Shown here one piece after another: positions 12,550 to 53,228 of a DNA stretch of 64,000 nucleotides. The notes below the pieces were generated by a model, which saw only the letters and a program-made list of their open reading frames with translations, had not been told where the DNA came from and did not search any database. Position 1 is the first letter of the stretch. Each line of letters opens with the position of its first letter. The stretch lies in the sequence record ON190024.1. One strand, given 5' to 3'. The position numbers and the translations under genes were made by a program.

Positions 12550-12929
12550 ACGATAACGAACTAAAAGGCTTACCAACTGACATCGACTTGCTAGAAACAG
12601 CAATTCAGTTGCTCAAAGCAAAACCTTATGATCAGCGCCGTTTAGAGCATTTAGCAAATGTCATGACTCGCGTTCAGCCTCAAGTGCTCAAGCGAAAAGC
12701 TGAACTCGACTGCTGGGCAGTGAAGCCATTCACCAGAATGGATATGAAAAAGCTACAAATCGTACCAACGAACGGCGTGTTTTATCAAGATCAATTGATT
12801 CACACGTACGACAAAGACGCTCAAGCGTTTCACATGCTTGATTATTTCAAAGAGAACGACATCAAATCATACGGTGAGTTTCTTGACCATCTTAGCGAAT
12901 TGGAGAATAAAGTATGCACGCAGGTGTAA
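12546..12929 (+). CDS. hypothetical protein
   Basis: ORF track, ATGA overlap. Confidence 0.75.
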   Translation: MNDNELKGLPTDIDLLETAIQLLKAKPYDQRRLEHLANVMTRVQPQVLKRKAELDCWAVKPFTRMDMKKLQIVPTNGVFYQDQLIHTYDKDAQAFHMLDYFKENDIKSYGEFLDHLSELENKVCTQV

Positions 12930-13888
12930 TTGGCAAGTTCAACAACTATCATCAAGGTCATTTCAAACTGATCAAGTTCGCGCTATCGCTTGCAGACAAA
13001 GTAACTGTTTTGCTTTGCACTGAAGACACTGACCCGATTCCAGTTGAAACGCGCATGAAGTGGATGCACCAGGACTTCGGTAATCGCATTCGCATTAGTG
13101 TAATCTGTCCGAGTGATGAAAATCTATCGAACAAATCAGAGTCCGACCGCGAAGTATCGAAGCAGTGGGCTGCTTTCATCGACGAGCGTTACCCAGAGAT
13201 TGATGCATTCGTTGGTTCAGAGCAGTACATCAATTACTGTGCTGAGTACGGTAACTTTGACGGAATCATTTACGACGAAGAACGCGAGATCACTCCTTGC
13301 TCAAGCACTTCGGTTCGCGAGAACGATTCTCACGAGTTCTACAGCCCGAGCGCACAACAAGACCGAGTACGTCGAATTGCATTCATCGGTCCCGAGTCTT
13401 GTGGTAAGTCATGGAACGCAGCATCAATCGCAGCCGCTAACGGGTATGAACTTGTACTCGAAGCAGCACGCGACATCATGAGCGACAATCACTACACTGA
13501 ACACGATGTTCTTGAGTTCGCGATTGCACAAACTGCACGAATCGAAGCAACCGGTAAAGAAAGTGACACTGTAATCGTTGATTCTTCAGCTATTACGTCG
13601 GCAGTTTACAGTCAGTTTCAATTCAATCAATCATCGGTTCTTCTGAATGCATTAGCTGCTTTTGAAAACATTGATGCTTATGTACTCTTCCGACCAAACT
13701 GTGAGTTTGTTCAAGATGGTACACGCACACAGACGCAAGAAGACCGCGAACGCTGGTTTGAACTTGCAAAGTCTATGCTTCTTCGATTGAACAAGCCATT
13801 CTTGATTGTTCAGAAAGGCAATGATTGGGAAGAACGTTTACACGAAACTGCCAGTCATGTGGCATTATTGAGAGGTAAAATATGTTAG
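12914..13888 (+). CDS. nadR: NadR-like bifunctional NMN adenylyltransferase / ribosylnicotinamide kinase (no HTH)
   Basis: GKF...HQGH HIGH-type motif, SSTSVR, then P-loop GPESCGKS and VIVDSSAITS. Confidence 0.9.
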   Translation: MHAGVIGKFNNYHQGHFKLIKFALSLADKVTVLLCTEDTDPIPVETRMKWMHQDFGNRIRISVICPSDENLSNKSESDREVSKQWAAFIDERYPEIDAFVGSEQYINYCAEYGNFDGIIYDEEREITPCSSTSVRENDSHEFYSPSAQQDRVRRIAFIGPESCGKSWNAASIAAANGYELVLEAARDIMSDNHYTEHDVLEFAIAQTARIEATGKESDTVIVDSSAITSAVYSQFQFNQSSVLLNALAAFENIDAYVLFRPNCEFVQDGTRTQTQEDRERWFELAKSMLLRLNKPFLIVQKGNDWEERLHETASHVALLRGKIC

Positions 13889-14513: not shown

Positions 14514-15179
14514 ATGTTTGATTTACTGTTTAACATTAACCACACTGTGTTTTCAATTGGTGATTATGCAGTGTCTGGTCTAGAACTCTGGGCAACTCTT
14601 ACTGGTTTGATTTGTGTCATCATGGCACGAATGAATATGAAGCACAACTTCACAGTCGGCATTGTGAACTGTATCGGGTTCGCAATTCTGTTCTTCCAGA
14701 TTCAGTTGTATAGTGACGTGCTCTTGCAGGGGTTCTTCATTGCAATGTCGATCTTCGGCTTCTATCAATGGAACAAGCAAGGTACAGATGAAGTCAAAAT
14801 CCGTTACTTGAAGATGCGTAAATTCGCAGGTTCGATTATAGCGACGTTGATTGGTACTGCGGCACTCGCGTACTTCATCGACCCGATTATGAACTTCAGT
14901 GGTTCACTGCTTGTTACCGATTACGTACACGCCCCTGCTGAACTCGCTGTGCAAGATGCATTCACGACTGTAGCAAGTATCATGGCATTTATGCTCATGA
15001 TTCAGCGTAAAGTCGAGGCATGGTGGTACTGGGTTGCAGTAAACGTAGTGTGCATTGTGAACTACAGCACGCAGGGCGTAATTGTAGTTGCTGCTGAATA
15101 CTGCATTTTCCTAGCAAACGCGCTTTATGCAATCGTAATCTGGCATAAAGAAGGCATGAAAAACGAGGCACAAGCATGA
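14514..15179 (+). CDS. pnuC: nicotinamide riboside transporter PnuC
   Basis: multi-TM; QIQLYSD..LQGFF, GFYQW, DAFTTVAS, RKVEAWWYWVAVN. Confidence 0.92.
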   Translation: MFDLLFNINHTVFSIGDYAVSGLELWATLTGLICVIMARMNMKHNFTVGIVNCIGFAILFFQIQLYSDVLLQGFFIAMSIFGFYQWNKQGTDEVKIRYLKMRKFAGSIIATLIGTAALAYFIDPIMNFSGSLLVTDYVHAPAELAVQDAFTTVASIMAFMLMIQRKVEAWWYWVAVNVVCIVNYSTQGVIVVAAEYCIFLANALYAIVIWHKEGMKNEAQA

Positions 15180-21429: not shown

Positions 21430-21707
21430 TGCAGTACACACTTGATTTACTCAATGAAAAGCTTGAATCCCTCAAGTCAGAACAATTCGGTTGGGTTGTT
21501 GCATTACCTAAAAAAGAAGGTGATGACATTGCAACTGTTCAGAAAATCATTACTGACATTGCAGTTCAGATTACATCAATCGAGCACGATATTAAACTCA
21601 TCGAAGCATCACGAGGTCTAAATGCAAGAGTAGTTAAGCAAATCGTCGATGAACATTACCGCGAACACTACAAACTTGACGAAAACGACAACTTTATCGG
21701 AGATTAA
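21429..21707 (+). CDS. hypothetical coiled-coil protein
   Basis: ORF track. Confidence 0.7.
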   Translation: MQYTLDLLNEKLESLKSEQFGWVVALPKKEGDDIATVQKIITDIAVQITSIEHDIKLIEASRGLNARVVKQIVDEHYREHYKLDENDNFIGD

Positions 21708-21708
21708 C

Positions 21709-22533
21709 ATGGAAATTGAAATCGAGCGCAAATGGCTAGTCACTGCTGAACAGTATCGTGAATTCGTAAACTGGATGCATTATCGCGATAACGGCGCCAC
21801 TTCAATGAACATCTTTCAGCGTTATTTCAAGAAAGATGAGATCTCATTCGTCGATGGCTCGTTTTACATCAACAGTCGAGTGAAGGAAGGTCGCGGTTAT
21901 TTGATTAAAGCACCGAAAGACTGTCCTGATCTAACTGGCGTGAATCTACGCAAGCTAGGTGCGCGTATGCGACTAACCACGTCTGAAAACTTCATTGACA
22001 AGCTTGAATTCACAATCAAGATTCCACACGGTGACGGCATTGCCAAGCGTGAAATCAATATCCCACTTGAATCTGGTTATGCAGACTTGATCACAGATTC
22101 GATTGAGAAAGATGACAAGCTAAATCGCAATACAACCGAAGTCGTCCCGACGGGATTGATTAAAAAGGTTCGGTGGTCAGGTGAAGTTGACGACGTACAT
22201 TACGATGCTGACCGTTTCACGAATCGACCTTTTTACATAATCGAAGCTGAATTCAAAGATGAAGCTGAAGCTGAAGCATTCGTCTCACCTTTTGAGTTCA
22301 TTCGCGAGGTGACGGAAGACAAGCGATTCAGCAACAAGCGAATGGCATGGAATCACGATGCCGCCGACGGGTTGGCTAGTAATATTCGTCTTTATGTCGA
22401 GAAGCTTGAGAAAGAAGCGAATGCATTGCGAAGTGATACGCTAGTATCAATGCGTGAAAGCGTAACGAACGAAATCATGGCAGAACGTTACGAGAAAATT
22501 GCTCGTGACTTAAAACACATTGTAGGTGCGTAA
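21709..22533 (+). CDS. CYTH-domain protein (adenylate cyclase/triphosphatase-like)
   Basis: MEIEIERKWLV, REINIP, IKKVR, IIEAEF, EVTEDKRFSN. Confidence 0.85.
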   Translation: MEIEIERKWLVTAEQYREFVNWMHYRDNGATSMNIFQRYFKKDEISFVDGSFYINSRVKEGRGYLIKAPKDCPDLTGVNLRKLGARMRLTTSENFIDKLEFTIKIPHGDGIAKREINIPLESGYADLITDSIEKDDKLNRNTTEVVPTGLIKKVRWSGEVDDVHYDADRFTNRPFYIIEAEFKDEAEAEAFVSPFEFIREVTEDKRFSNKRMAWNHDAADGLASNIRLYVEKLEKEANALRSDTLVSMRESVTNEIMAERYEKIARDLKHIVGA

Positions 22534-27449: not shown

Positions 27450-28145
27450 ATGAAGAAGCTCGTACTTGTAGCTGCTGCGGCTGTAGCTCTTGTTGGATGT
27501 GGTGATTTGCCACGTCTGGAAACTAAGACAGACAAGAAATTCACCACGGTTAATGCCGTTGTGAACAAAAAAGAGCGTGAAATGATTAACTACTGGATGG
27601 CAGATGCTGACGGTAGTAACTATCTTTACAACAAGCTTTGGACTGCACTTGCTACTCGTAACAAATACGGTTCTAATGCTGTGCGTCGTTCAGATGATGA
27701 AGTCCCGTTCTGTGATGTTATTGTAGCCCTTGCTAAATCTGAAGAAGGTATTCGAAGCACGTACGAGCGCACATTTAACAATCAGTGGCGAACTCAATAC
27801 GGCATTAGTCTTAATCAGCAATGTGGCTATACTCCACCAGAAACACTCGAAGAGCAAGCAGAGCGCATTGAGCAACTTGAAATGCAAGCTGATTTGAAAA
27901 AGCGTGAGCAACAAGCACAGAGTATTGAAACTCTTGATGACGTTGCCGACGCGACGACTGAGCTACTTGATCCGCATGAGTACGACTATCTAATCGAATC
28001 GGCACGCGAGTGTAATCGAGCCAAAACCAAATTGCTTGAACTAACGCAAGCAGGCAAACCTCTGACACAAGCTGACGGCTCAGATGCACGTAAGCTAATT
28101 ATCGAATGCAAAATGCATAAACTTGAAGTTGAATTGAATAAGTGA
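27450..28145 (+). CDS. lipoprotein, paralogue of 39992..40711
   Basis: signal peptide with LVGC lipobox; shared EVPFCDVI, CNRAK, KLEVELNK. Confidence 0.8.
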   Translation: MKKLVLVAAAAVALVGCGDLPRLETKTDKKFTTVNAVVNKKEREMINYWMADADGSNYLYNKLWTALATRNKYGSNAVRRSDDEVPFCDVIVALAKSEEGIRSTYERTFNNQWRTQYGISLNQQCGYTPPETLEEQAERIEQLEMQADLKKREQQAQSIETLDDVADATTELLDPHEYDYLIESARECNRAKTKLLELTQAGKPLTQADGSDARKLIIECKMHKLEVELNK

Positions 28146-28935: not shown

Positions 28936-28964
28936 TTTCCGATGCGGGTTGTTACGACATCCCG

Positions 28965-28972
28965 CATAAATA
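28965..28972 (+). promoter_or_regulatory. T4-type late promoter
   Basis: CATAAATA, same as the element upstream of the tail-fibre gene (62447-62454, minus strand). Confidence 0.7.
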
Positions 28973-29004
28973 GTTCTATATGGACTAACAAGGAAATTAC
29001 GACA

Positions 29005-29535
29005 ATGCCAACTCCTACAACAGGTGCGATTTCAATCGGTACCGTTCGTGATTATTTCAGTAGAACCGGCGCTGCTTCATTGTCTCAGTACTACAGAGGC
29101 GGCGGTATTGTTCCTGATATTACTGAAAATGCTCACGTACCAACTTCAGGCGCGATTAGCTTGAATGACTTGCGCGGTGTATATCGCTTGTCAACGTATA
29201 CGACATCATTTACGACAACATACAACACCACTGTATCAACATCGAATACGACTTCGCGTAGTACATCAAGAAGTACAACTAGAAGTACTGCATACAGTAC
29301 AACTCGCTCGACTGCGTATACTACTAGTTGGACAACTAGCCGAACTACGTCGGTGGCGAAAGGATCGTATACGACCACATACGCAACTTCACGTGCTACA
29401 ACTCGTTCAACTGCGTATAACACGACACGTTCAACTGCTTATACGTCTACATGGACGACATCGTGGACAACGACGTACAACACAACAAGATCAACATCAA
29501 ACACAACTTCTCGAAGCACGCAAGTTGCAGTTTAA
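29005..29535 (+). CDS. Ser/Thr tetrad-repeat protein, putative virion fibre/adhesin
   Basis: AAGGA RBS; N-domain with two GAIS motifs; 26 X-[STNA]-T-[STA]-type tetrads. Confidence 0.8.
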   Translation: MPTPTTGAISIGTVRDYFSRTGAASLSQYYRGGGIVPDITENAHVPTSGAISLNDLRGVYRLSTYTTSFTTTYNTTVSTSNTTSRSTSRSTTRSTAYSTTRSTAYTTSWTTSRTTSVAKGSYTTTYATSRATTRSTAYNTTRSTAYTSTWTTSWTTTYNTTRSTSNTTSRSTQVAV

Positions 29536-29547
29536 CGAGGTTAAATT

Positions 29548-29766
29548 ATGAGCTACAATGAAGAACACGAGAATCGAATCAACGAGCTTGAGTCAAAGGT
29601 TGCAAGGCTTGAGTCGATAATTGAAAATCTGGTTGAGTCTATGACATCAAACAGCGAAGCTATTATCGAACACATTGCATCACTTGAGACCGAGAGAGAT
29701 TCGATTCTTGCATCATATGATGACAAACTTAATGAGATCGTGAACAAATATGAACCCAAGCAATAG
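29548..29766 (+). CDS. small acidic coiled-coil protein
   Basis: GAGG RBS, heptad pattern. Confidence 0.75.
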   Translation: MSYNEEHENRINELESKVARLESIIENLVESMTSNSEAIIEHIASLETERDSILASYDDKLNEIVNKYEPKQ

Positions 29767-30604
29767 AGAAATGACTGGGTTCAATAACATATCTCGCATT
29801 GGTAAGTTGAAATTACAATCCGATGCAGACAACGTCCGTGCCATGTGTATGGACGTTGTTCGTTTATTGAACTCCAAAAATATACCATCCAACTTCGACA
29901 TCAATCACAATGACGGTGGTAACATCGGCGTGCATGAGTGGGTGTCACAAATCCGCTTCATTCACTTGAAATACATGAACGTTAATTTTCAAACGAAGAT
30001 TTTCAAGCATGCCTATCACAACACTGAAAACGTCGTTGACTATTTTGACACGTTCAAACATTCTGATAAATATCATCTTTCGGCGAAGCCTCGATTCCTA
30101 GAATATGAAAACGTCGTATTTCTATGTGGATCGAATGTGCTTGAATTGGCAATTGACTTTGACAAGATTGATGCGTTAGTCGAACAATATCCTGATTTGG
30201 TGATTAAACCTCACCCGATTACGACGTTGTATTACATCAATATGCTTAAATCTAGATATGGTTCAAAGCGAATTCTATCCCAAAAGATCAGTGGTGTTGA
30301 TGTGCTTAAAGCTGCTAAACGTGTTTGGTTGCCTTCAACGTCTGAGTTCTGGTTTAGTGCCTTGAACTACGACAAAGAAATCGGGTTTATCTCTAAAGAT
30401 GGTTTCTGTGGAACGTACACGTCAATCATCAACGCAGTATGGGAATTGCATGAAGAAACCGGTGATCCATTGAAAGATATTGTGAATAAAATTATCTCGT
30501 CACCTTACTCAGGTCTGTATGGTAGTATGGCAGACTTTGAAGAGCATCACGAGAAATACTGTAATGTGATTCTAGAACTAGGGGGTAATTTCGATAATGT
30601 ATGA
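29750..30604 (+). CDS. GT-B glycosyltransferase-like protein (capsule biosynthesis KpsC/KpsS-like)
   Basis: LVIKPHP, then VWLPSTSEFWFSALNYDK resembling the S..G.EAL motif region; alternative start 29771. Confidence 0.6.
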   Translation: MNPSNREMTGFNNISRIGKLKLQSDADNVRAMCMDVVRLLNSKNIPSNFDINHNDGGNIGVHEWVSQIRFIHLKYMNVNFQTKIFKHAYHNTENVVDYFDTFKHSDKYHLSAKPRFLEYENVVFLCGSNVLELAIDFDKIDALVEQYPDLVIKPHPITTLYYINMLKSRYGSKRILSQKISGVDVLKAAKRVWLPSTSEFWFSALNYDKEIGFISKDGFCGTYTSIINAVWELHEETGDPLKDIVNKIISSPYSGLYGSMADFEEHHEKYCNVILELGGNFDNV

Positions 30605-31229
30605 TTATGTAATTCACACTTCGATTAGTGACAAAAGTCAGCTAAACCAACTAGTGATGTTTGTCGGGTCTTTCATCGAGACGCACAAAAAAGGTCGCGT
30701 GGTCTGCGTGACTGATCTTGAACTTGATTTCACGATGCCTCGACTGTCATTTGAGAAAAAACTACCCGAAGAGTACGTTTTCATTTCAGTTGACAATCTA
30801 TTTTTACAAAAAACATACGGCGTTGTTAGCTACATTGACAGTGGTACTTGGCGATGTACTTGGCAAAAGAATGATCATGATGATTTCGTCATTAAAAAGC
30901 ATGGCGAAAGAAGCGGGTTGATTCACCCTGATATTGCAATTGCAAATTACAATGTTTCGAGACATGGCGATCTCGACATGTATTACAACGCGCTTCGTTA
31001 CATTGAGAGCGCAATCACGATCAACTGCAAAGACTTTGCCCCTGCTGCTGAGAATAAAATCAACAGCTTTTACACGCTTGTATTTCCATGGGAGATTTAT
31101 TTTCACGTTATGATCACTTACCAAGAGTATATTGATTCTGAATACGTTGAGCGAGTTCGCGCTAACTGTCATAAGTTCGCACACTCGGTTTATTACAGAA
31201 AATCAGGGTTGTTACGTGATGGGTTATGA
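30597..31229 (+). CDS. hypothetical protein, possibly degenerate GT-A glycosyltransferase
   Basis: N-terminal beta-alpha-beta pattern ending VVCVTD, similar to GT8-type starts; weak. Confidence 0.4.
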   Translation: MYDYVIHTSISDKSQLNQLVMFVGSFIETHKKGRVVCVTDLELDFTMPRLSFEKKLPEEYVFISVDNLFLQKTYGVVSYIDSGTWRCTWQKNDHDDFVIKKHGERSGLIHPDIAIANYNVSRHGDLDMYYNALRYIESAITINCKDFAPAAENKINSFYTLVFPWEIYFHVMITYQEYIDSEYVERVRANCHKFAHSVYYRKSGLLRDGL

Positions 31230-31902
31230 TGAGATAATTTTAGTATCTGGTCTTGATAGTTTAGTTCTATATGAATTTCTTGAACGAAAGCCACACCCTG
31301 TTTACTTTAAATGGGGTTTTGCTATCGACGACATTGAAATGGCTGCTTTGCCTGAAGAAACAACTATCATAGAAATGCCAGAGATTTTGCATTTGAAACA
31401 TGATCCGTATGAGTTCAAGACACCAAGAAATCCCGATTTAATTGGTCGGAATACGTTGATGTTTAACTCAGTTTTCCATGCATTCAGACCAAACGTAATT
31501 TATCGCGGGATGTTGAAAGGTGATGATTTCTATTACGACGCATCGCCTACGCATTCAGATGAAATCGCAGCTATGTGGTCGAAAATGCTGAATAAAGAGT
31601 GTCGAATTGAACAACCGTTTAAAGACAAAACGAAACGTGACATAATGCAAATGGCGGTCGAATACGGTATTGATGCGAATTCATTACAGCATTGTTACAA
31701 TCGAGAACACAACTGCGGTCGATGTAGCAAGTGTGTGGATGCACATGTTAATTCTATGTACACCGACAACCCAGACATCATGTGGCTGAAACGAATAGTC
31801 AATGATTCGGGTATGTCATCAATGGCTAATCACATGTTTGGTGTTGATACAGTTGACAGAATAAAGGAATTTCTAGATGAATTTGATCGAACAGACTGCT
31901 GA
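31219..31902 (+). CDS. QueC-like PP-loop ATPase
   Basis: SGLDS, GRN, YYD, PFKDKTKRDI, CY...CGRCSKC Zn motif; 227 aa; PP-loop lacks one Gly. Confidence 0.75.
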   Translation: MGYDEIILVSGLDSLVLYEFLERKPHPVYFKWGFAIDDIEMAALPEETTIIEMPEILHLKHDPYEFKTPRNPDLIGRNTLMFNSVFHAFRPNVIYRGMLKGDDFYYDASPTHSDEIAAMWSKMLNKECRIEQPFKDKTKRDIMQMAVEYGIDANSLQHCYNREHNCGRCSKCVDAHVNSMYTDNPDIMWLKRIVNDSGMSSMANHMFGVDTVDRIKEFLDEFDRTDC

Positions 31903-32770
31903 TAAATTCGAGCATAGTTACCGAGAAGACGTTCAAGGCGTACAGTGGTATTTCGGTAGTCGAACGCATGATTTTTATCTGTATGGAATAGACTCTCTTA
32001 TTGATAAAGTCAAAGACTGTGATTTTATTGAAATCAAGCATGTTCAAGAGGGTACGCTGGTTAAACGAGGCGAAGCTGCGGTCACGGTTACGATTACAGA
32101 TCATAGTCGTATCGCATATGGGAACATGATTGAAACATTGTTGTACAATGAGTTGTGGTATTCGAGCACGGTCGGTACGATTTTACATCGTTGTCTTGAT
32201 GTGTTGCATGAAAACGGCTATGACGCTCGTTCAGCATACCCTCAAATCGGACGGGCGAGTTCAACGCCAGAACAGTCAGCTAAAGCAAGGGATGTGTTCG
32301 CACGTATATTTTATCAATCGTCGAATGAGAAAATACCCGTTGCGATGCACAGTGATATTTTAATCAACGGTGAGGAATATTGCATGGAACATTATAACGG
32401 CATTATGATTGATACTTTCGATAAGCAAGCTTGCATTGACTTGATCAACAAGAAAGACTTTCGAGGGACTGTGATGGTTGACTCTCAGCCAATAATTGAA
32501 ACAATTGAGAAAGTTCTAGCTGAAACAAAATGCTTTGTTGCACAAGCTGAAAGTGTTACACTCGATGAGTGGATAAAGATAGTGCGACATTTTAAAGGCA
32601 ATAAGCGAATTTTCTACGGGATTGGTAGCTTTGCATTTAGCAATATATCACGAGACACATTTGGTTTGATTTACAAAGTGTGTGCAGTTAAGAAAAACGA
32701 CAACTGGATCGGAGTTTCAAAGATGACGACAGGTAAACAAACATCGGCTGGTTATAAGGTTATAGGTTAG
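31877..32770 (+). CDS. compact NAMPT/NAPRT-like type II phosphoribosyltransferase
   Basis: aligns by eye to NAMPT at 35934 (EGT, ET....LWY..TV, IDTFD, DS, YGIG, RDT, KM...K...AG). Confidence 0.75.
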   Translation: MNLIEQTADKFEHSYREDVQGVQWYFGSRTHDFYLYGIDSLIDKVKDCDFIEIKHVQEGTLVKRGEAAVTVTITDHSRIAYGNMIETLLYNELWYSSTVGTILHRCLDVLHENGYDARSAYPQIGRASSTPEQSAKARDVFARIFYQSSNEKIPVAMHSDILINGEEYCMEHYNGIMIDTFDKQACIDLINKKDFRGTVMVDSQPIIETIEKVLAETKCFVAQAESVTLDEWIKIVRHFKGNKRIFYGIGSFAFSNISRDTFGLIYKVCAVKKNDNWIGVSKMTTGKQTSAGYKVIG

Positions 32771-32772
32771 TT

Positions 32773-33762
32773 ATGAATTATTGTATAGCGCCGTTTACAT
32801 CGCCGTCTATTACACCAGACGGTTTTAAAATTTGCAGCATGCCAGGTCAGAAAGTATACCCTGATATTTCATTCTGGAATAGTGATGAAGTGATCAAGAT
32901 TCGCGAACAGATTATCGCTGGTGAAATTCCTGAATCGTGCAAGGCATGTCGTAGTATGCGTGACGGGTTGATTGTGTCAAAAGAAAAACCAACTGATACT
33001 CATGTTGACTTGAATTTCAAAGCTCTTTACATTGCGCGGTCGAACAAGTGTGAATATGCTTGTGAAATGTGCAGTTCATCAATCTCACATAGCTATGACA
33101 AGAAATACAATGACGGTAAGTTGGGGATTATTGAGAATGACTTTGATGTTATTCCGTATCTGCACGAAACACAAGCCGTTGCTATTTCGGGCGGGAACCC
33201 TGTCATTGACAAAAAGGTTGCAGAGATTCTTGAGAATCTAGACCCTGACGTGGTAGAACGTTTCATTATTACTTCAAATGGGACAGTCTTTCCAGACAGA
33301 TTCTTGAATGCAATTAAGAGATTGAAATGTGACGCGACTTTGATATTCTCTATGGACGGACCGAAAGAGTTTAATGAAGTGGTTCGATCTGGTGCGAAGC
33401 AAGAGAGAATCTATCGCACCATTAATCGAGTTCTTGACGAGATTGAAGATTACCCAAACTTGCATGTGGCAATTGAGTATACTTTCACGAATAAGTCAAT
33501 TCATCACTACGTTGATTTGTATGATGAAATGCTCTTCGAGATCAACCCGAAGCATTTGAAAAACAACTCAGTTAAAGTGATTGCGAATATGTGTACATAC
33601 CCGCATCACCTTAGCGTTACAACTGTTCCCAAAACCGTCATTGATGACATATTGTTCAATCAGTTGCCATATTTGAGACAGCAACCCAGCCCATTGTCAA
33701 ATCAATTCAAACTTGGCTATGATAAGTTTTTGACTCAGTATCACAACAGCGTGATTATGTGA
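32773..33762 (+). CDS. radical SAM protein with N-terminal twitch domain
   Basis: C.APF...C...WNS...IRE...CKAC then CEYACEMC, GGNP, SMDG. Confidence 0.85.
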   Translation: MNYCIAPFTSPSITPDGFKICSMPGQKVYPDISFWNSDEVIKIREQIIAGEIPESCKACRSMRDGLIVSKEKPTDTHVDLNFKALYIARSNKCEYACEMCSSSISHSYDKKYNDGKLGIIENDFDVIPYLHETQAVAISGGNPVIDKKVAEILENLDPDVVERFIITSNGTVFPDRFLNAIKRLKCDATLIFSMDGPKEFNEVVRSGAKQERIYRTINRVLDEIEDYPNLHVAIEYTFTNKSIHHYVDLYDEMLFEINPKHLKNNSVKVIANMCTYPHHLSVTTVPKTVIDDILFNQLPYLRQQPSPLSNQFKLGYDKFLTQYHNSVIM

Positions 33763-34879
33763 TCAGATCATACGCTTTGATATGTGAGTAAAACTCTGGA
33801 CACGCAGACGATAAATTAGTTTTCGTCTTCGTGTCTATTCTTTTGTTAAGAACAAAGAATTCAGGGTTGAATTTACAAACACTGTGTTCCAGAGTAAGAC
33901 ATTCAGCAACGTGCTTAAATGGTCTAGCCAAATCCTCACGCCCATCTTTTAAATACGCTTCTTCTTTCACTTTGAATCTTGATAATAGCTGGTCTCGAAA
34001 TGCAACTGGAATGTTGTAAATTGAGTATGGATTATCAGGCTCACCGACGACATGCACAGACAAACGTACACGTTTACCATCATAAAGCGAATCAAAATCT
34101 GAAACCAATGTTTCAAGATGTTCAAGAGTCACGTTTGACACGGTCGCAGTGATAACTACATCAAAGTGTTGCTTGATGACTTCAATGTTTGATTTGACTT
34201 TTTTGATGTCTGCAAACAATCGAATATAATCTTGGTATTCTCGTAGACCGTCGATTGATACGAACACCGTTGATGCATTAGCTTCTTTAAGCGATTTGAT
34301 GAGATCTGAGCCATCGGCTAACACTAGTGATGAGCCATTCGTGAAAATATTCACTGCGGCTTTAATGTCGCCTACGTTGCGAAGAACTTCAGGAGCATTT
34401 GACGAGCGGGTAATTTCACCGCCTAGAATTGTCAATGACGAAAGTCCTTTGCTGATTGTGTTGATTGTCGTACTCAAATCATTGAATCGAGTACTTGAAT
34501 CTTCTTCATTGAACAATCTAGCTTTCAAGTCTGATAATTTGCTGTAGCAGTAACGACAAGCTTGGTTACATTCATTACTAGGGAATACTTGTAGCCAGCG
34601 AACTGAATCAGCGGGCATAATAGGTGAAACTTCAGAATCGTGTTCTGTTAGACGCTGTGGGTCATTATCAGTGATGCACATTTGACATGCCTTTGACAGC
34701 TTGCTCATGTCGTGGTTTAGCATTGCTTCACGATAAGCGACAAGCTTTTCATCATTCCAAGCGTCTGCTAGTGTTTTTTCATCAGTAAACCATTCATAAT
34801 CAGCCGAACAGCAAAACGTAATTTGATTGTTTGCTCGTGTGATGAACTGCTTGAACGGCATATAACATAGTGGTTTCAT
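33755..34879 (-). CDS. radical SAM protein with N-terminal twitch domain
   Basis: CYMPF...CC...WN...YRE...CQMC then CNQACRYC, GGE, SIDG. Confidence 0.85.
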   Translation of the reverse strand: MKPLCYMPFKQFITRANNQITFCCSADYEWFTDEKTLADAWNDEKLVAYREAMLNHDMSKLSKACQMCITDNDPQRLTEHDSEVSPIMPADSVRWLQVFPSNECNQACRYCYSKLSDLKARLFNEEDSSTRFNDLSTTINTISKGLSSLTILGGEITRSSNAPEVLRNVGDIKAAVNIFTNGSSLVLADGSDLIKSLKEANASTVFVSIDGLREYQDYIRLFADIKKVKSNIEVIKQHFDVVITATVSNVTLEHLETLVSDFDSLYDGKRVRLSVHVVGEPDNPYSIYNIPVAFRDQLLSRFKVKEEAYLKDGREDLARPFKHVAECLTLEHSVCKFNPEFFVLNKRIDTKTKTNLSSACPEFYSHIKAYDLIT

Positions 34880-34889
34880 GTTTCTGTCC

Positions 34890-35462
34890 TTAGTTAAAAA
34901 TGCTACTTGTATATATAGCAGTCTTCAGAGCATTGAAATGATCGTCAACTCTATTCACGTGTATGCATTCAATGTCAAATTTTTCTTGGATTTCTCGGAT
35001 GTTGTCTAGCGAGTCGTCGATGAAGTATTTCACCTCATGCAGTTCACACAGCTTCTCAACATATTTTGCCTTCGAGTCGAAGTACTCAATCGAAATCACC
35101 TCACTTATCATCCCTGGGAATAACGCATTTAGATTATGCACGCGATTTGACCATGAAGTTCTACTCATGCTGAACTTGGTTAGTGCAATGATGTTATACC
35201 GGTCTGAGAGTTCGCGTAACGCATCGTAAGCGTCTTCATATGCGGGTATGTACTTTGCACACTCATGTTCATTGTATGCACCTATAAGCTTGCCTAGCTG
35301 CATGTCACTCACGTTAATAAATAAAGAGCGTGCATCGGTATCAGTATTTGAACCGTTGATATTCAAATTATCAAGCATGCCTAATTGCATCATGAAGAAT
35401 GGCAAGTTGGCTTTCCAGTTAAGCAAAACCCCGTCTACATCTATGATGATCGTCTTTTTCAT
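34890..35462 (-). CDS. HAD-family phosphatase (5'(3')-nucleotidase-like)
   Basis: IIIDVDGVL, FIDDS. Confidence 0.85.
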   Translation of the reverse strand: MKKTIIIDVDGVLLNWKANLPFFMMQLGMLDNLNINGSNTDTDARSLFINVSDMQLGKLIGAYNEHECAKYIPAYEDAYDALRELSDRYNIIALTKFSMSRTSWSNRVHNLNALFPGMISEVISIEYFDSKAKYVEKLCELHEVKYFIDDSLDNIREIQEKFDIECIHVNRVDDHFNALKTAIYTSSIFN

Positions 35463-35933: not shown

Positions 35934-37427
35934 ATGCTAAATCTTAATCAAAATATCGCAATCGCAACTGACAGCTACAAAGTTTCACACTGGTCTCAAT
36001 TCCCTCGTGGTCTAGAGTACAGCCAATATTACGTCGAAAGCCGGGGTGGTAAGTTCGACAAAATTATGGTCGATGGTATGGCATACATGTGTCGTATTCT
36101 CGAAAAAGGTGTTTCGATGAACGATGTCAAGCGTGCGAAACGTCTGTTCAAAAAGCACTTCGGTTCTGAAGTCTTCAATGACAAGGGTTGGGACATCATC
36201 GTTAACGAACTGAAAGGCAAACTGCCTATTAAGATTCGTGCGGTCAAAGAAGGTACTGTAGTACCAGTTAAACACCCTATCTTGACGATTGAGAACACAG
36301 ATCCGCGTTTTGGTTGGCTGCCTGGCTATCTTGAAACGTTCATCTTGCGTGCTCTTTGGTACCCGACAACTGTAGCAACGATCTCGTTCGAGGTGAAGAA
36401 AATCATTCGCCAATTCATGAAGAAAACGGTTGATGATGAACGCATTGCAGAACAAGAGCCATTCAAACTTCACGACTTTGGTTCTCGTGGTGTATCAAGT
36501 GGCGAATCTGCGGCTATCGGCGGCTCTGCTCACTTGAAAAACTTCTTGGGTACTGACACTGTAGAAGCACTTGTTGCAGTTGAAGAACTTTACGCTGAAG
36601 ATGTTGAAGATTTCATTGCGGGATTCTCTATCCCTGCGCGTGAACACTCAACAACTACAATCTACAAAGAAGTTGGTGAAGATCAAGCATTCTTGAACTC
36701 TATCGAGCAATGGGGTGCGGCATTATACGCTTGTGTAATGGACAGCTACGACTACGAAGCAGCAATGAATCGTGTCTCAACTGGTCGCTTCAAAGAGCTA
36801 ATCATCAGCAAAGGCGGTACGTTTGTTGCTCGTCCTGACTCTGGTGTGCCTGTAGATGTAGTAATGAAAGGTCTTGAGATTCTTGGTAAAAATGTTGGTT
36901 ACACAATCAACAGCAAGGGTTACAAAGTATTGCACCCTAGCTACCGCATCATTCAAGGCGACGGCGTGAACATCGAAGAAATTCGTCGAATTCTGTCTTA
37001 CATGGAAAGTAAAGGCTGGTCGGCAGAAAACATTGCATTTGGTATGGGTGGTGGTTTGCTTCAGCAACTCGACCGTGATACTCAACGCTTTGCAATGAAA
37101 ATGTCAGCGGCAATCATCAACGGCGAATACGTTAGCGTGTTCAAAATGCCGAAGACTGATCCGACAAAAGCATCAAAAGCAGGTTTCTTGGATTTGATTG
37201 CAGTCGATGCAGACAATCCGAACCCAGCGGCTCGTGGTTACGTGACGTTCTCTTCTGAAGATTACGATAATCGCGTTCACCCGAAAAGCGTGATGCAGAC
37301 AATCTTCGAAGACGGTGTAACAGTTGCTGACTTCTCACTAGAAGAAGCTCGTAAACTGTCTGACGTACAAGCTGATTTCCTGAACGAAGGTGAATGGAAA
37401 ATCGCGAAAAAGATTCAAACTGCGTAA
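35934..37427 (+). CDS. nadV: nicotinamide phosphoribosyltransferase
   Basis: TDSYK.SH, LWYPTTVAT, HDFGSRG, PAREHST, RPDSG, IIQGDG, FGMGGGLLQ...RDT. Confidence 0.93.
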   Translation: MLNLNQNIAIATDSYKVSHWSQFPRGLEYSQYYVESRGGKFDKIMVDGMAYMCRILEKGVSMNDVKRAKRLFKKHFGSEVFNDKGWDIIVNELKGKLPIKIRAVKEGTVVPVKHPILTIENTDPRFGWLPGYLETFILRALWYPTTVATISFEVKKIIRQFMKKTVDDERIAEQEPFKLHDFGSRGVSSGESAAIGGSAHLKNFLGTDTVEALVAVEELYAEDVEDFIAGFSIPAREHSTTTIYKEVGEDQAFLNSIEQWGAALYACVMDSYDYEAAMNRVSTGRFKELIISKGGTFVARPDSGVPVDVVMKGLEILGKNVGYTINSKGYKVLHPSYRIIQGDGVNIEEIRRILSYMESKGWSAENIAFGMGGGLLQQLDRDTQRFAMKMSAAIINGEYVSVFKMPKTDPTKASKAGFLDLIAVDADNPNPAARGYVTFSSEDYDNRVHPKSVMQTIFEDGVTVADFSLEEARKLSDVQADFLNEGEWKIAKKIQTA

Positions 37428-39991: not shown

Positions 39992-40711
39992 ATGAAAAAA
40001 TTAATCGCAATCGTAGCACTAGCAGCATCAGTAGCAATGACTGGTTGTACTGACACCATCGACAATTCAGCAACTGATCAGCTAAAAGCAGCCATGCCAG
40101 TTCTTTCTCAAACTGAAAAAGATATGCTGAATGTATTCGCTGCTCCGAACTTCTTGAGCCGTTACGACAACATGTATGCAGAAGTGGTCAAAAATCGCGT
40201 ACACTTCGGTCAGAAGCCGATTCCACGAGCAGATACAGAAGTGCCGTTCTGTGATGTAATCGACGCTGTAATCGCAGCAGAGCGCGAAAACAATCTAACA
40301 GAACGTGATTACTCACTGAGCAATCAATGGAAGATGAAATACGGCATCACACTTCTTGAGCAATGTAATCAATCAGACCGTGCTCGTATTGAAATGCAGA
40401 TCGCTAAAGCAAAAGCCGATGCTGAAGCAGCTAAAGATCGAGTAATCATCGAAGAACAAGAATTCAGCAAGAAAGAAATCAAAGCTGAGAAAATCATCGA
40501 AGACACCGTTGTAATCAAAGATGATGTGCTACTATCACCTGAACTTGTTCGTGAACTACGTGGCTCAGTTAAAGACTGTAATCGCGCTAAAGTCAAGCTA
40601 ATGAGTGTAGTTGATGCCGGTGAGCAGCTAACTACAAAGCACTACGACGAAGTTAAAGGTCTAGTTCTACAGTGTGAAATGTTGAAACTAGAAGTCGAAC
40701 TCAACAAATAA
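39992..40711 (+). CDS. lipoprotein, paralogue of 27450..28145
   Basis: signal peptide with MTGC lipobox; shared motifs. Confidence 0.8.
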   Translation: MKKLIAIVALAASVAMTGCTDTIDNSATDQLKAAMPVLSQTEKDMLNVFAAPNFLSRYDNMYAEVVKNRVHFGQKPIPRADTEVPFCDVIDAVIAAERENNLTERDYSLSNQWKMKYGITLLEQCNQSDRARIEMQIAKAKADAEAAKDRVIIEEQEFSKKEIKAEKIIEDTVVIKDDVLLSPELVRELRGSVKDCNRAKVKLMSVVDAGEQLTTKHYDEVKGLVLQCEMLKLEVELNK

Positions 40712-41163: not shown

Positions 41164-42216
41164 TCATTTCACCATTTTGATTTGAATCTGATTGTCCATG
41201 TAAGCCATTTTCTTTTCAAATTCAACATCATATTCTGGTCGATGTTCGTATTCGACTGAAAGCATTTGCTTCAGACAACGGTACAATTCCGACTTGTAAT
41301 ACCCTTCTTTCATTCCCTTCATCTGTTCATATTGCTTTTTCATAGCAGCTTTGATTATCTTCGGGTCCATGAATTTGATTGACATTTCTCGCGGTGCTTT
41401 TACTGTGCCAAAGTCAACAAACACCTGAGCCTTTTCAGCTACTTGAATGAAGTCATAAATCGTGTCATAACTCATTCGACTTAGCGTGTGGTGCATACAA
41501 ACATGTTTGCTATGTTCTTTTAGCAACGGTACATTTGCAAGCATCAAGTCGTGGTCGATGTTCTGACGAATGTATTCGTTGCGCTCTTTTCCGCCGTCAC
41601 ATGAAATTGTAAACACTAGACGATGTTTGTACTTTTTACATATGGCTAGAATCTTCTTCGCAAGTGGCGTATGCAACACAGTACCATTTGTCAGAATGTA
41701 AACTTCCGCATTTGTTTCTTCCATGACTTCAGTCAGAACTTCGACTGTTCTCTTGTCCATGAACGGTTCGCCGCCGTATAGCACAACAGTTTCAACACCC
41801 TTCGGGATACTGAAATCGAGTTGTGTGTAATCGTAATGGTCGTCAATGTCATACAAGTCCATGTATGTTTTGCTATTCTTGCCATAGCACATTCGACACG
41901 CTAGGTTACATTTGTTTGACATCAATATTTGAATTGTTCTAGGATGCTCTTCGAGTGCTTCATATTCGAAGTACTTCTGATCAGACAATTCGCCATAACT
42001 CATACATTCTTTGCAGTATTCTGGTAAAGTGTCATACTCAAACATTTTGGCACGATGTTCATTGATGATGTCACTGTGCCACCAGTCTTCAACGTTCGGG
42101 AATGGTTCACTTAGCTGAGAACAGCAAATGTGATACCCATCAGGTTTTGCGTCACGTGTATTAAAGGGAGAGCCACAAAGTGGTCTCTTCCCGTCTTTAA
42201 ATCCGAATTTATCCAT
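41164..42216 (-). CDS. radical SAM protein with N-terminal twitch domain
   Basis: CGSPF...CC...WW...HR...CKEC then CNLACRMC, YGGEPF, TNG, SCDG. Confidence 0.88.
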   Translation of the reverse strand: MDKFGFKDGKRPLCGSPFNTRDAKPDGYHICCSQLSEPFPNVEDWWHSDIINEHRAKMFEYDTLPEYCKECMSYGELSDQKYFEYEALEEHPRTIQILMSNKCNLACRMCYGKNSKTYMDLYDIDDHYDYTQLDFSIPKGVETVVLYGGEPFMDKRTVEVLTEVMEETNAEVYILTNGTVLHTPLAKKILAICKKYKHRLVFTISCDGGKERNEYIRQNIDHDLMLANVPLLKEHSKHVCMHHTLSRMSYDTIYDFIQVAEKAQVFVDFGTVKAPREMSIKFMDPKIIKAAMKKQYEQMKGMKEGYYKSELYRCLKQMLSVEYEHRPEYDVEFEKKMAYMDNQIQIKMVK

Positions 42217-52346: not shown

Positions 52347-53228
52347 ATGCAGGTAAGATGGACAGAAATGTTTTACAGCATTCAAGGCGAAGGGAAATAC
52401 ACTGGTCAAGCTAGTTTATTCTTTCGCTTCTGGGGTTGTAACTTAGAATGTCACGGCTTCGGGCAAGAAGATCCGACGAATAAAGATACATGGGTATTAG
52501 ACTTCAAAGACTACGACCCGAAAGCGAACAACGTGACTTCAGTCGAAGATCTGCCTGTATGGACTCGTGGATGTGACTCTTCTTACACGTGGGCTAAAAA
52601 GTATGCTCATCTTGCTTCAAAGTCTGAAGTCGCAGATGTATGCGAAGCAATGCTTGAGAAACTGCCTAATCGAGTTTGGGGAGATATTCATTGGGTAATT
52701 ACAGGTGGTGAGCCGATGATGAATCAAGCTCAAATCATCGAAATGATGAATTACTTCATCAAAATTGACAATTATCCAAAACATGTCACGATTGAAACTA
52801 ATGGTACGCGAGAACTCAAGCCAGAATTTGCAGAGCGTTGGGCGCTAATTCAGTGGAATACGCATAGTAATGTTCACTTGAGTTTCAGCGTATCAGCTAA
52901 GTTGTACAACGTAACTGGCGAAGTGCATGAAAAAGCAATCAAGCCAAAAGTTGTCAACAAGTATGCACGCATCGGAGAAGTCTGGCTCAAGCCAGTCGTC
53001 GTAGACAAGGAAGCGTGTTGGGACGAGCTTGATGCTGTGATCGCACAGTTCAAAGCAGAACGCAACTTACACAACGTTCCAGTGTATATCATGCCATGTG
53101 GTGCTACTCAAGAAGAGCAAGAACAAGATGGTTATATGGCGTCAATCGCAGGGAAAGCATTGGCGCGTGGTTACAACGTTTCTGTACGAACTCACGTATG
53201 GATTTGGGGTAACGCGGTGGGCACGTAA
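52347..53228 (+). CDS. queE: 7-carboxy-7-deazaguanine synthase (radical SAM)
   Basis: EMFYSIQGEG, F.RFWGCNLEC..F ... CDS, ITGGEP, IETNGT. Confidence 0.9.
   Translation: MQVRWTEMFYSIQGEGKYTGQASLFFRFWGCNLECHGFGQEDPTNKDTWVLDFKDYDPKANNVTSVEDLPVWTRGCDSSYTWAKKYAHLASKSEVADVCEAMLEKLPNRVWGDIHWVITGGEPMMNQAQIIEMMNYFIKIDNYPKHVTIETNGTRELKPEFAERWALIQWNTHSNVHLSFSVSAKLYNVTGEVHEKAIKPKVVNKYARIGEVWLKPVVVDKEACWDELDAVIAQFKAERNLHNVPVYIMPCGATQEEQEQDGYMASIAGKALARGYNVSVRTHVWIWGNAVGT

What the first reader, a model, noticed from the sequence alone, without database searches (positions are those of the whole stretch)
31877..32770. Second, miniaturised NAMPT paralogue embedded in the modification cluster
Seen in sequence: this 297-aa protein aligns by eye with the 497-aa NAMPT at 35934. 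Matching segments are VQWYFGSR/SQYYVESR, IKHVQEGTLV/IRAVKEGTVV, ETLLYNELWYSSTVGT/ETFILRALWYPTTVAT, IDTFD/MDSYD, YGIGS...RDT/FGMGG...RDT and VSKMTTGKQTSAG/VFKMPKTDPTKASKAG. The substrate-defining TDSYK, HDFG and RPDSG motifs are altered. Inference: with a canonical NAMPT 3 kb away, this copy likely transfers phosphoribose from PRPP to a different acceptor (a deazapurine, a glycan or a protein), with the HAD enzyme removing the phosphate. PRTase plus HAD logic is known from toyocamycin biosynthesis and glycan ribofuranosylation, but with other PRTase folds.
Basis: partly seen in the sequence, partly recalled or inferred. Interest (0 to 1): 0.72.

Follow-up and report, generated by a model that had tools for sequence, protein, structure and literature searches.

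The report
Shrunken NAMPT-like enzyme paired with QueC-like ligase
A 297-residue phage protein is a real, slimmed-down relative of the NAD-salvage enzyme NAMPT that keeps the sugar-phosphate transfer machinery but has lost the nicotinamide pocket, and it always travels with a Cap9/QueC-like enzyme, so it probably builds an unusual 7-deazaguanine-type nucleotide rather than NMN.

Summary
Window 31877-32770 (+) encodes KVP40.0259 (the window is Vibrio phage PVA8, a KVP40-like phage).

It is not a recent copy of the phage's NadV. It belongs to a rare, deep-branching NAMPT-like clade of 10 sequences, 297-404 aa, separated from 24 NAMPTs with 100/100 support.

- **Kept in every member:** the phospho-histidine triad (human H247, D279, D313) and the PRPP and 5-phosphate contacts (R40, R392, K400, K415, K423). 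R196 is kept in nine members and is Lys in the tenth.
- **Replaced in every member:** the nicotinamide contacts F193, D219 and R311.
- **Selection:** dN/dS is about 0.07, the same as NadV.

The new finding is its partner. In five independent phage lineages the gene abuts a QueC-family gene that scores best against Cap9, the enzyme that ligates 7-carboxy-7-deazaguanine to amines. The Cap9 residues that contact the deazaguanine are conserved in it. Both genes occur in exactly the same 35 of 50,697 phage records. In this phage group the whole island is gained or lost as one block.

Best reading: an active PRPP-dependent transferase whose acceptor is a 7-deazaguanine carboxylate or carboxamide. 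The substrate is untested. The HAD link exists only in this phage group.

The parts
31877..32770 (+). Reduced NAMPT-like type II phosphoribosyltransferase, 297 aa (KVP40.0259 orthologue). This is the finding.
31216..31902 (+). QueC-family PP-loop enzyme closest to Cap9 (KVP40.0258 orthologue). It has GxDS, GR[ND], aromatic-x-[DE] and C..CGxCxKC motifs. Its 3' end overlaps the start of the PRTase gene.
30597..31229 (+). 210-aa protein of unknown function (phrog_30897). It is conserved with the island in QD01 and D479.
29750..30604 (+). 284-aa protein with a weak GT52-like (glycosyltransferase) match. It is conserved with the island.
29548..29766 (+). 72-aa coiled-coil protein, conserved with the island.
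28942..29535 (+). Thr/Ser/Arg-rich repeat protein with a conserved N-terminal domain (annotated 'cell wall mannoprotein'). It is the first gene of the island and a possible substrate or partner.
32773..33762 (+). Twitch-domain radical SAM enzyme, 329 aa (NF033640-like), immediately downstream of the PRTase gene. It is conserved in D479 at 55% identity.
33755..34879 (-). Second twitch-domain radical SAM paralogue, 374 aa. It is present in the KVP40 and QD01 groups but not in D479.
34890..35462 (-). HAD-like hydrolase related to T4 30.2 (phrog_420). It marks the last gene of the island.
41164..42216 (-). Third twitch-domain radical SAM paralogue, 350 aa. It lies 6 kb away but is missing from VH7D together with the island.
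35934..37427 (+). Canonical NadV/NAMPT, 497 aa. It serves as the comparator, is not part of the island, and is retained in phages that lack the island.

Best explanation
The 297-aa protein is a catalytically competent, PRPP-dependent type II phosphoribosyltransferase from a distinct NAMPT-like clade whose acceptor pocket has been rebuilt, so it does not make NMN. It works as a two-enzyme unit with the overlapping upstream gene, a QueC-family ATP-dependent carboxylate-activating enzyme of the Cap9 type.

Proposed sequence of events:
1. The QueC-like enzyme adenylates 7-carboxy-7-deazaguanine. That substrate can come from the phage's own FolE/QueD/QueE genes or from the host. The enzyme then converts it to a 7-carboxamide, using ammonia or a larger amine.
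2. The NAMPT-like enzyme normally acts on a heteroaromatic carboxamide. Here it transfers 5-phosphoribose from PRPP to a ring nitrogen of this deazapurine, using the retained His-Asp-Asp phospho-histidine mechanism.
3. In KVP40-like phages the product is then tailored by the rest of the island: HAD phosphatase, twitch radical SAM enzymes and a GT-like protein.

Shown here: the fold, the pattern of retained and lost residues, purifying selection, the gene coupling, and the gain or loss of the island as one block. Inferred: that the enzyme is active, that PRPP is the donor, the identity of the acceptor, and the order of the steps.
For: - **Fold:** pLDDT 95.9; NAMPT is the top structural match, E 2e-18, TM-score about 0.82.
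- **Residues kept:** across 10 clade members and 24 NAMPTs, R40, H247, D279, D313, R392, K400, K415 and K423 (human numbering) are invariant. R196 is R in 9 clade members and K in 1.
- **Residues lost:** F193, D219 and R311 are invariant in the 24 NAMPTs. In the clade F193 becomes Q/K/H/C, D219 is deleted or R/T/E, and R311 becomes M/I/L/V. Residue roles are taken from PMC3665594 and PMC12143786.
- **Selection:** dN/dS is 0.073 against QD01, compared with 0.069 for NadV.
- **Separate clade:** it is split from NAMPT with 100/100 support.
- **Partner gene:** a QueC-like gene lies directly adjacent in the KVP40 group, L003, L005, L006 (two copies) and L010. Both genes are found in the same 35 of 50,697 phage records.
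- **Partner family:** its profile hits Cap9 (9NTO) at E 1.4e-11, ahead of QueC 2PG3 (8e-10) and 3BL5 (1e-7). The PADLOC CBASS QueC model matches full length at E 2.3e-13.
- **Partner residues:** the Cap9 contacts to the deazaguanine (L83, R86, Y115, D117) align to invariant L74 and R77, an aromatic residue, and D/E.
- **Island behaviour:** VH7D keeps both flanks and NadV but lacks the whole block from the repeat protein to HAD, plus the third radical SAM gene.
- **NAD salvage already covered:** the phage encodes NadV, a NadR-like protein and a PnuC-like protein, so another NMN-forming enzyme would be redundant.
Against: - There is no biochemical evidence for this protein or any clade member.
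- The first Ser of the PP-loop (Cap9 S18, needed together with S23 for defence) is V/I/H in the phage QueC-like family, so its ATP chemistry is not assured.
- The ribose contacts G353 and D354 are changed (A/V/I/M/L and E/S/Q/D). G383 and G384 become E and K in two members.
- One bacterial member (P0007, L004) has no QueC-like neighbour.
- The sample is small: about six lineages in 1.8 billion representative proteins.
- Only a monomer was modelled, whereas the NAMPT active site is formed across a dimer.
- In four lineages the pair sits inside or just after tail-fibre modules. A small-molecule pathway does not explain that placement.
Confidence: 0.45

Rival explanations
1. It is a PRPP-dependent transferase for some other acceptor unrelated to 7-deazaguanine, such as another heteroaromatic acid, a glycan or a lipid-linked sugar. 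The QueC-like enzyme then acts on the product's carboxylate, in the way NadE acts on NaAD or LarE acts on a pyridinium dicarboxylate mononucleotide.
For: The catalytic and PRPP residues are kept while the nicotinamide pocket is lost. PP-loop enzymes of the PF06508 superfamily act on ribotide carboxylates, for example LarE. The island also carries a weak GT52-like protein, and QD01 adds an RfaF-like heptosyltransferase, which points towards glycan chemistry.
Against: The partner keeps the specific deazaguanine-contacting residues of Cap9 and the QueC-type Zn motif, which LarE lacks. The GT-like genes are absent from the other four lineages that carry the pair.
Confidence: 0.25
2. It is an NAD-related enzyme: a minimal NMN- or NaMN-forming transferase, or a Namat-like enzyme that joins nicotinamide to ADPR-PP. 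On this reading it adds to the phage's defence against NAD-depleting immunity.
For: Automatic annotation already calls the orthologues nicotinamide or nicotinate PRTase. The best sequence match in the PDB is the phage Namat 9W5X, at E 2e-5 compared with 1e-3 to 7e-3 for the NAMPT chains. Namat shows that phages can retune NAMPT-like enzymes. This phage invests heavily in NAD salvage.
Against: Namat keeps the NMN-binding residues. Here F193, D219 and R311 are replaced in every clade member. The score against the NCBIfam equivalog is 64 bits against a cut-off of 405. None of the neighbours scanned matched a PRPS-like (Adps) or NMNAT family. NadV, NadR-like and PnuC-like genes are already present.
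Confidence: 0.12
3. It is a non-catalytic derivative: a ligand-binding or scaffolding protein that only keeps the fold, for example a sponge for a phosphoribosyl-containing signal, or a structural partner of the QueC-like enzyme.
For: About 40% of the NAMPT chain is deleted, including the 75 C-terminal residues and several barrel loops. The ribose contacts G353 and D354 are altered. The gene is split into two pieces in phage phi-pp2.
Against: Eight catalytic and phosphate-binding residues, including the phospho-histidine triad, are invariant across a clade whose members share only 23-50% identity. A ninth, R196, is kept in nine of ten members. That pattern is hard to explain without catalysis. 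Purifying selection is as strong as on NadV.
Confidence: 0.08

Closest known systems
NAMPT / NadV (nicotinamide phosphoribosyltransferase; PF18127 plus PF04095), including the KVP40 NadV encoded 3 kb downstream
   Same: Same type II PRTase fold, with TM-score about 0.82. Same His-Asp-Asp triad, and the same Arg/Lys contacts to PRPP and the 5-phosphate.
   Different: It is 297 aa rather than about 490. It has no NAMPT_N domain match. Segments equivalent to NadV 57-95, 165-175, 205-219, 253-263, 288-296, 316-333 and 423-497 are missing. F193, D219 and R311 are replaced. It forms a separate clade and has a different gene partner.
Namat of NARP1 (phage nicotinamide ADP-ribose transferase; PDB 9W5X and 9W5W)
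   Same: It is also a phage NAMPT-like enzyme with retuned specificity, and it is the best sequence match in the PDB.
   Different: Namat changes the donor (ADPR-PP), keeps the nicotinamide and NMN contacts, stays full length, and pairs with a PRPS-like Adps. The enzyme here changes the acceptor pocket, is shortened, and pairs with a QueC-like enzyme.
Cap9-Cap10 of type IV CBASS, and QatC-QatB (QueC-family deazaguanylation of protein N-termini)
   Same: The partner gene is a Cap9-like QueC-family enzyme with conserved deazaguanine contacts. As in those systems, it is coupled to a second protein borrowed from nucleobase metabolism. The Cap9 authors note that N9 stays free for the addition of ribose.
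   Different: Those systems are bacterial defence systems, the second protein is TGT-like, and the substrate has an N-terminal Gly motif. Here the system is phage-encoded, the second protein is a PRTase, and no conserved N-terminal Gly substrate is evident.
Toyocamycin/sangivamycin pathway logic (QueC/QueE homologues plus ToyH PRTase plus ToyI HAD phosphatase). This comparison is from my own knowledge, not from a tool.
   Same: A deazapurine base made by Que enzymes is phosphoribosylated with PRPP and then dephosphorylated by a HAD enzyme. This phage group has the same set of enzyme classes.
   Different: To my knowledge ToyH is a type I PRTase, a different fold. The HAD gene is not part of the conserved core here.

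Membership tests
PF04095 NAPRTase/NAMPT superfamily (type II PRTase) | Pfam model score above the gathering threshold | tested here: met
   28.2 bits against a cut-off of 20.8, E 1.9e-6.
PF04095 NAPRTase/NAMPT superfamily (type II PRTase) | Type II PRTase fold: an open sandwich domain plus an alpha/beta barrel | tested here: met
   Model pLDDT is 95.9. The top 50 PDB matches are all NAMPT, with TM-score 0.75-0.84 normalised to the query.
Functional NAMPT/NadV (NMN-forming) | Catalytic His247 with Asp279 and Asp313 | tested here: met
   H158, D179 and D202 are invariant in all 34 aligned sequences.
Functional NAMPT/NadV (NMN-forming) | Nicotinamide-binding residues Phe193, Asp219 and Arg311, with Tyr18 from the partner subunit | tested here: not met
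   Q123, a deletion and M200 occupy the three positions. All three are also changed in the other nine clade members, yet invariant in 24 NAMPTs. The Tyr18 position is F11 and varies within the clade.
Functional NAMPT/NadV (NMN-forming) | N-terminal NAMPT_N domain (PF18127) and the NCBIfam equivalog score | tested here: not met
   There is no PF18127 hit. NF006629 scores 64 bits against a cut-off of 405.
Functional NAMPT/NadV (NMN-forming) | Homodimer with active sites at the subunit interface | not testable with these tools
   Only monomer prediction is available. R29 (human R40, from the partner subunit) is invariant, which is consistent with a dimer but does not prove one.
Namat (NARP1) | Retained NMN-binding core plus a PRPS-like Adps partner gene | tested here: not met
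   The nicotinamide contacts are lost. None of the island genes scanned matched a PRPS-like family in Pfam, PHROGs or NCBIfam. The adenine selectivity clamp was not examined.
QueC family, Cap9-like branch (for the partner gene 31216-31902) | C-terminal Zn-binding Cys motif C(x)nCxxCxxC | tested here: met
   C159, C166, C169 and C172 are invariant in the family.
QueC family, Cap9-like branch (for the partner gene 31216-31902) | Residues contacting the 7-deazaguanine (Cap9 L83, R86, Y115, D117) | tested here: met
   They align to invariant L74 and R77, an aromatic Y/F, and D/E. The contact residues are listed.
QueC family, Cap9-like branch (for the partner gene 31216-31902) | Pyrophosphate-binding SxGxDS loop | tested here: inconclusive
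   GxDS is invariant, but the first Ser (Cap9 S18) is V/I/H in the family. In most members the next residue is Ser.
Protein deazaguanylation systems (Cap9 with CD-NTase, QatC with QatB) | Adjacent substrate protein with an unstructured N-terminus that begins with Gly after Met removal | tested here: not met
   Only one upstream protein (L010, 319 aa) starts with MG. The window's repeat protein and the upstream proteins of L003 and L006 do not. This does not exclude other acceptor amines.
Toyocamycin-type PRTase plus HAD phosphatase pair | A HAD phosphatase gene consistently linked to the PRTase gene | tested here: not met
   HAD is adjacent only in the KVP40, QD01 and D479 phages. It is absent next to the pair in L003, L005, L006 and L010.

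The most novel reading that the evidence does not exclude
The pair builds a nucleotide on a protein. The Cap9-like enzyme would amide-link 7-carboxy-7-deazaguanine to an amine of a phage protein. Candidates are the low-complexity proteins encoded just upstream, or tail-fibre components. The NAMPT-like enzyme would then phosphoribosylate the free N9 of the tethered base. This would be the 'subsequent addition of ribose' that the Cap9 study left open, and it would give a protein-linked 7-deazaguanosine monophosphate. A related unexcluded reading is that the pair consumes host 7-carboxy-7-deazaguanine, which would starve type IV CBASS and Qat defence systems of their substrate.
Probability: 0.15. 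Interest if true: 0.88.

Novelty: new variant of a known kind. Interest (0 to 1): 0.64.

Why it matters
NAMPT-like enzymes in phages are currently read as NAD+ salvage or anti-defence genes, and orthologues of this protein are already auto-annotated that way. This clade shows the same scaffold stripped of its nicotinamide pocket and permanently coupled to a Cap9-like QueC enzyme.

If the pair makes a 7-deazaguanine ribotide, it would be a route to deazapurine nucleotides in phages that is independent of DpdA, and a new acceptor class for type II PRTases. If the base is protein-tethered, it would extend the recently discovered deazaguanylation modification from bacterial immunity to phages and add a ribosylation step.

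Either way it corrects a functional misannotation. It also gives a compact two-gene cassette that can be tested directly in E. coli.

Tried and rejected
- **Wider sampling found little.** Pattern-based scans of viral, metagenome and genome contig collections with the family alignment returned only KVP40 itself plus ordinary NadV-type or fragmentary hits. Word-indexed searches with the PRTase and QueC-like profiles added almost nothing. The family really is rare in these databases.
- **Expression timing could not be determined.** There is no T4-type late promoter (TATAAATA) near the island, and sigma-70-like sites are no more frequent than in shuffled sequence.
- **The shared N-terminal domain is only weakly supported.** I tested whether the window's repeat protein and the low-complexity proteins upstream of the pair in L003, L006 and L010 share an N-terminal domain. 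The upstream gene of L003 was the top hit among 1,098 ORFs, but only at E 0.11. The reciprocal search ranked the window protein second, at E 0.37. PHROG 26817 links them weakly. I treat this as a lead, not a result.
- **The fold search does not separate Cap9 from QueC.** The QueC-like model matches QueC 2PG3 (E 4e-7), Cap9 (best TM-score and rmsd) and QueC 3BL5 about equally. The Cap9 preference rests on the profile scores.
- The 210-aa unknown could not be modelled because two alignment rows came from annotated-record loci.
- **Two papers were not available.** Lee et al. 2017 on KVP40 NAD salvage and the 2024 MMBR deazaguanine review are not held in the library.
- **A recent in-genome duplication of nadV is rejected** by the tree.
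Full report
**Identity of the window**

The window is 100% identical, in the same coordinates, to Vibrio phage PVA8. It is 98.5% identical to KVP40, a Schizotequatrovirus. The ORF at 31877-32770 (+) is the orthologue of KVP40.0259. That gene is listed as 'hypothetical protein', with a note from the original annotation that it matches PF04095. More recent records call the orthologues 'nicotinamide phosphoribosyl transferase' or 'nicotinate/nicotinamide phosphoribosyltransferase'. The homology is therefore already in the databases. No function has been studied in the literature I could search.

**Checking the observation**

- BLASTP against the phage's 497-aa NadV gives two collinear HSPs, E 3e-8 and 4e-4.
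- Pfam PF04095 passes its gathering score.
- PHROG 448 matches residues 5-294 at E 9e-37.
- An AlphaFold2 model built on a 34-sequence alignment is very confident: pLDDT 95.9, pTM 0.91.
- Its best PDB matches are all NAMPT structures, with E about 2e-18 and TM-score about 0.82 normalised to the query.

**What kind of NAMPT relative it is**

An exhaustive HMMER search of 1.84 billion representative proteins found only a handful of true relatives:
- two further ~300-aa forms: P0006, from a phage contig, and P0007, from a bacterial contig;
- three 386-404 aa forms: P0009 and P0010 from phage contigs, and P0011 from a Chromobacterium genome contig where it sits among phage tail-fibre, lysis and replication genes.

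Everything beyond these is an ordinary NAMPT of about 420-570 aa, at E of 1e-6 or worse. In a maximum-likelihood tree the ten reduced sequences are separated from 24 NAMPTs, including the window's NadV, by a long branch with 100/100 support. The seven ~300-aa forms make a supported subclade. The protein is therefore not a recent duplicate of the neighbouring nadV. The tree is unrooted, so the direction of change is not shown.

**Active-site pattern**

I mapped human NAMPT residues through the phage NadV and took their roles from PMC3665594 and PMC12143786. The result is clear-cut.

| Residue group | In 24 NAMPTs | In the 10 clade members |
|---|---|---|
| R40, H247, D279, D313, R392, K400, K415, K423 | invariant | invariant |
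| R196 | invariant | R in nine, K in one |
| F193 | invariant | Q/K/H/C |
| D219 | invariant | deleted, or R/T/E |
| R311 | invariant | M/I/L/V |
| G353, D354 | G in 22 of 24; D invariant | A/V/I/M/L and E/S/Q/D |
| Y18 | invariant | Y in four of ten |

The phospho-histidine machinery and the PRPP and 5-phosphate contacts are kept. The residues that recognise nicotinamide are gone. This loss is shared by the longer members, so it predates the shrinking.

Relative to NadV, the 297-aa form lacks residues 57-95, 165-175, 205-219, 253-263, 288-296, 316-333 and 423-497. Between the window and QD01, dN/dS is 0.073, against 0.069 for NadV. The gene is therefore under strong constraint.

**The partner gene**

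In the KVP40 group the gene immediately upstream, overlapping by 26 bases, is a QueC-family protein. The same adjacency holds in four other, mutually distant phage contexts:
- L003: QueC-like then PRTase, with tail-fibre genes on both sides.
- L005: QueC-like then PRTase, followed by an internal virion protein.
- L006 to L008: QueC-like, a small RlmN/Cfr-like radical SAM gene, the PRTase, then a second QueC-like gene.
- L010: QueC-like, a radical SAM gene, then the PRTase, lying between the tail-fibre genes and the lysis genes.

These assignments also draw. In the 50,697-record phage collection, the two proteins are found in exactly the same 35 records. Only the bacterial member, P0007, lacks the partner.

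A profile of the partner family scores best against Cap9 (9NTO_B, E 1.4e-11), ahead of the two QueC structures. PADLOC's CBASS QueC model matches end to end at E 2.3e-13. The canonical QueC models match only the C-terminal half, at E 1e-6 to 5e-9.

Cap9 is an ATP-dependent ligase that attaches 7-carboxy-7-deazaguanine to the N-terminal amine of a CD-NTase. QatC is proposed to do the same to QatB. The Cap9 residues that hold the deazaguanine (L83, R86, Y115, D117) align with invariant L74 and R77, an aromatic residue and D/E in the phage family. The Zn-binding Cys motif is also invariant. The one deviation is the first Ser of the PP-loop. The fold model is QueC-like but does not discriminate Cap9 from QueC.

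Hutinet et al. had already noted that some phage 'QueC' singletons probably belong to a functionally different subgroup.

**The island in this phage group**

QD01 (76% identity) and D479 (51% identity) both keep these genes:
- the repeat protein;
- a 72-aa coiled-coil protein;
- the GT52-like protein;
- the 210-aa unknown;
- the QueC-like enzyme;
- the PRTase;
- one twitch radical SAM enzyme;
- the HAD.

VH7D keeps both flanks and NadV (97% identity) but lacks the entire block, and it also lacks the third radical SAM gene at 41164-42216. The block therefore behaves as one accessory module spanning about 28942-35462. The HAD and GT-like genes are not found next to the pair in the other lineages, so they are lineage-specific additions rather than core components.

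**Interpretation**

The simplest reading is an active PRPP-dependent transferase with a new acceptor. The conserved partner argues that the acceptor belongs to 7-deazaguanine chemistry. There is also a chemical logic to this. NAMPT's substrate is a heteroaromatic carboxamide, and the product of a QueC-type first half-reaction on CDG is a heteroaromatic carboxamide: ADG, or an N-substituted amide.

The Schizotequatrovirus group is reported to carry FolE, QueD, QueE, QueC and DpdA elsewhere in the genome (gene table), so CDG would be available.

Whether the base is free or tethered to a protein is open. Two things keep the tethered reading alive:
- The pair sits in or next to tail-fibre modules.
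- Low-complexity proteins with a weakly similar N-terminus lie upstream in four lineages.

Against it, the similarity is not statistically significant, and there is no conserved N-terminal Gly motif like that of Cap9 and QatC substrates.

An NAD-related role is unlikely. The nicotinamide contacts are lost, and the phage already has NadV plus a NadR-like and PnuC-like pair. That pair corresponds to the NARP3 type described in PMC13464706. A purely non-catalytic role is hard to reconcile with eight invariant catalytic and phosphate-binding residues, and a ninth kept in nine of ten members, across sequences that share only 23-50% identity.

**Verdict**

The feature is a new variant of a known enzyme kind, with a previously undescribed conserved partnership. 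No substrate has been tested, and the assays are straightforward.

Noticed in passing
window 28942-29535 (+); L002 6110-6622 (+): The Thr/Ser/Arg-rich repeat protein has regularly spaced Tyr and Trp residues and a conserved N-terminal domain. It lies next to three twitch-type radical SAM genes, an arrangement reminiscent of RiPP-like cross-linking substrates. In the public D479 record this ORF is not annotated, and small opposite-strand ORFs are annotated there instead.
   Followed up: partly
window 12914-13888 (+) and 14514-15179 (+): A NadR-like protein (cytidylyltransferase-like plus AAA_28 domains) and a PnuC-like NMN/NR transporter lie close together. They match the NARP3 type of NAD+ reconstitution pair recently described, and they occur in the same phage as NadV.
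   Followed up: partly
window 27450-28145 (+) and 39992-40711 (+): Two paralogous proteins (about 33% identity, both phrog_8733) bracket the region that holds the island and nadV. The first has a lipoprotein-like signal sequence. Both are retained in VH7D, which lacks the island.
   Followed up: no
phi-pp2 record JN849462.1 133480-134371: In phage phi-pp2 the orthologue of the reduced PRTase aligns in two pieces, and the corresponding database protein is only 210 aa. This suggests a frameshift or a sequencing error in that record.
   Followed up: no
L020 10989-12164 (QD01): QD01 carries an extra gene annotated as an RfaF-like ADP-heptose:LPS heptosyltransferase. It is inserted between the HAD gene and nadV and is absent from the window.
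   Followed up: no
L006 7570-8241 and 10203-10919: One phage lineage has two QueC-like paralogues (51% identical) flanking the radical SAM and PRTase genes.
   Followed up: no
protein P0008 (1877 aa, from the representative library): A very long protein gave 33 separate matches to residues 197-256 of the reduced PRTase (E 2e-35). It may be a tandem-repeat protein or an assembly artefact.
   Followed up: no
window 54688-55806 (+), 21649-22533 (+), 52347-53228 (+): A weak PARP-like ADP-ribosyltransferase domain, a CYTH domain protein and a probable QueE-type radical SAM protein (weak Fer4_12 match) lie elsewhere in the window.
   Followed up: no
L004 9243-9920 (-): The only bacterial member of the reduced clade (P0007) has no QueC-like neighbour. 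It is divergently adjacent to a Y_phosphatase3-family phosphatase and lies among transposase and group II intron genes.
   Followed up: no
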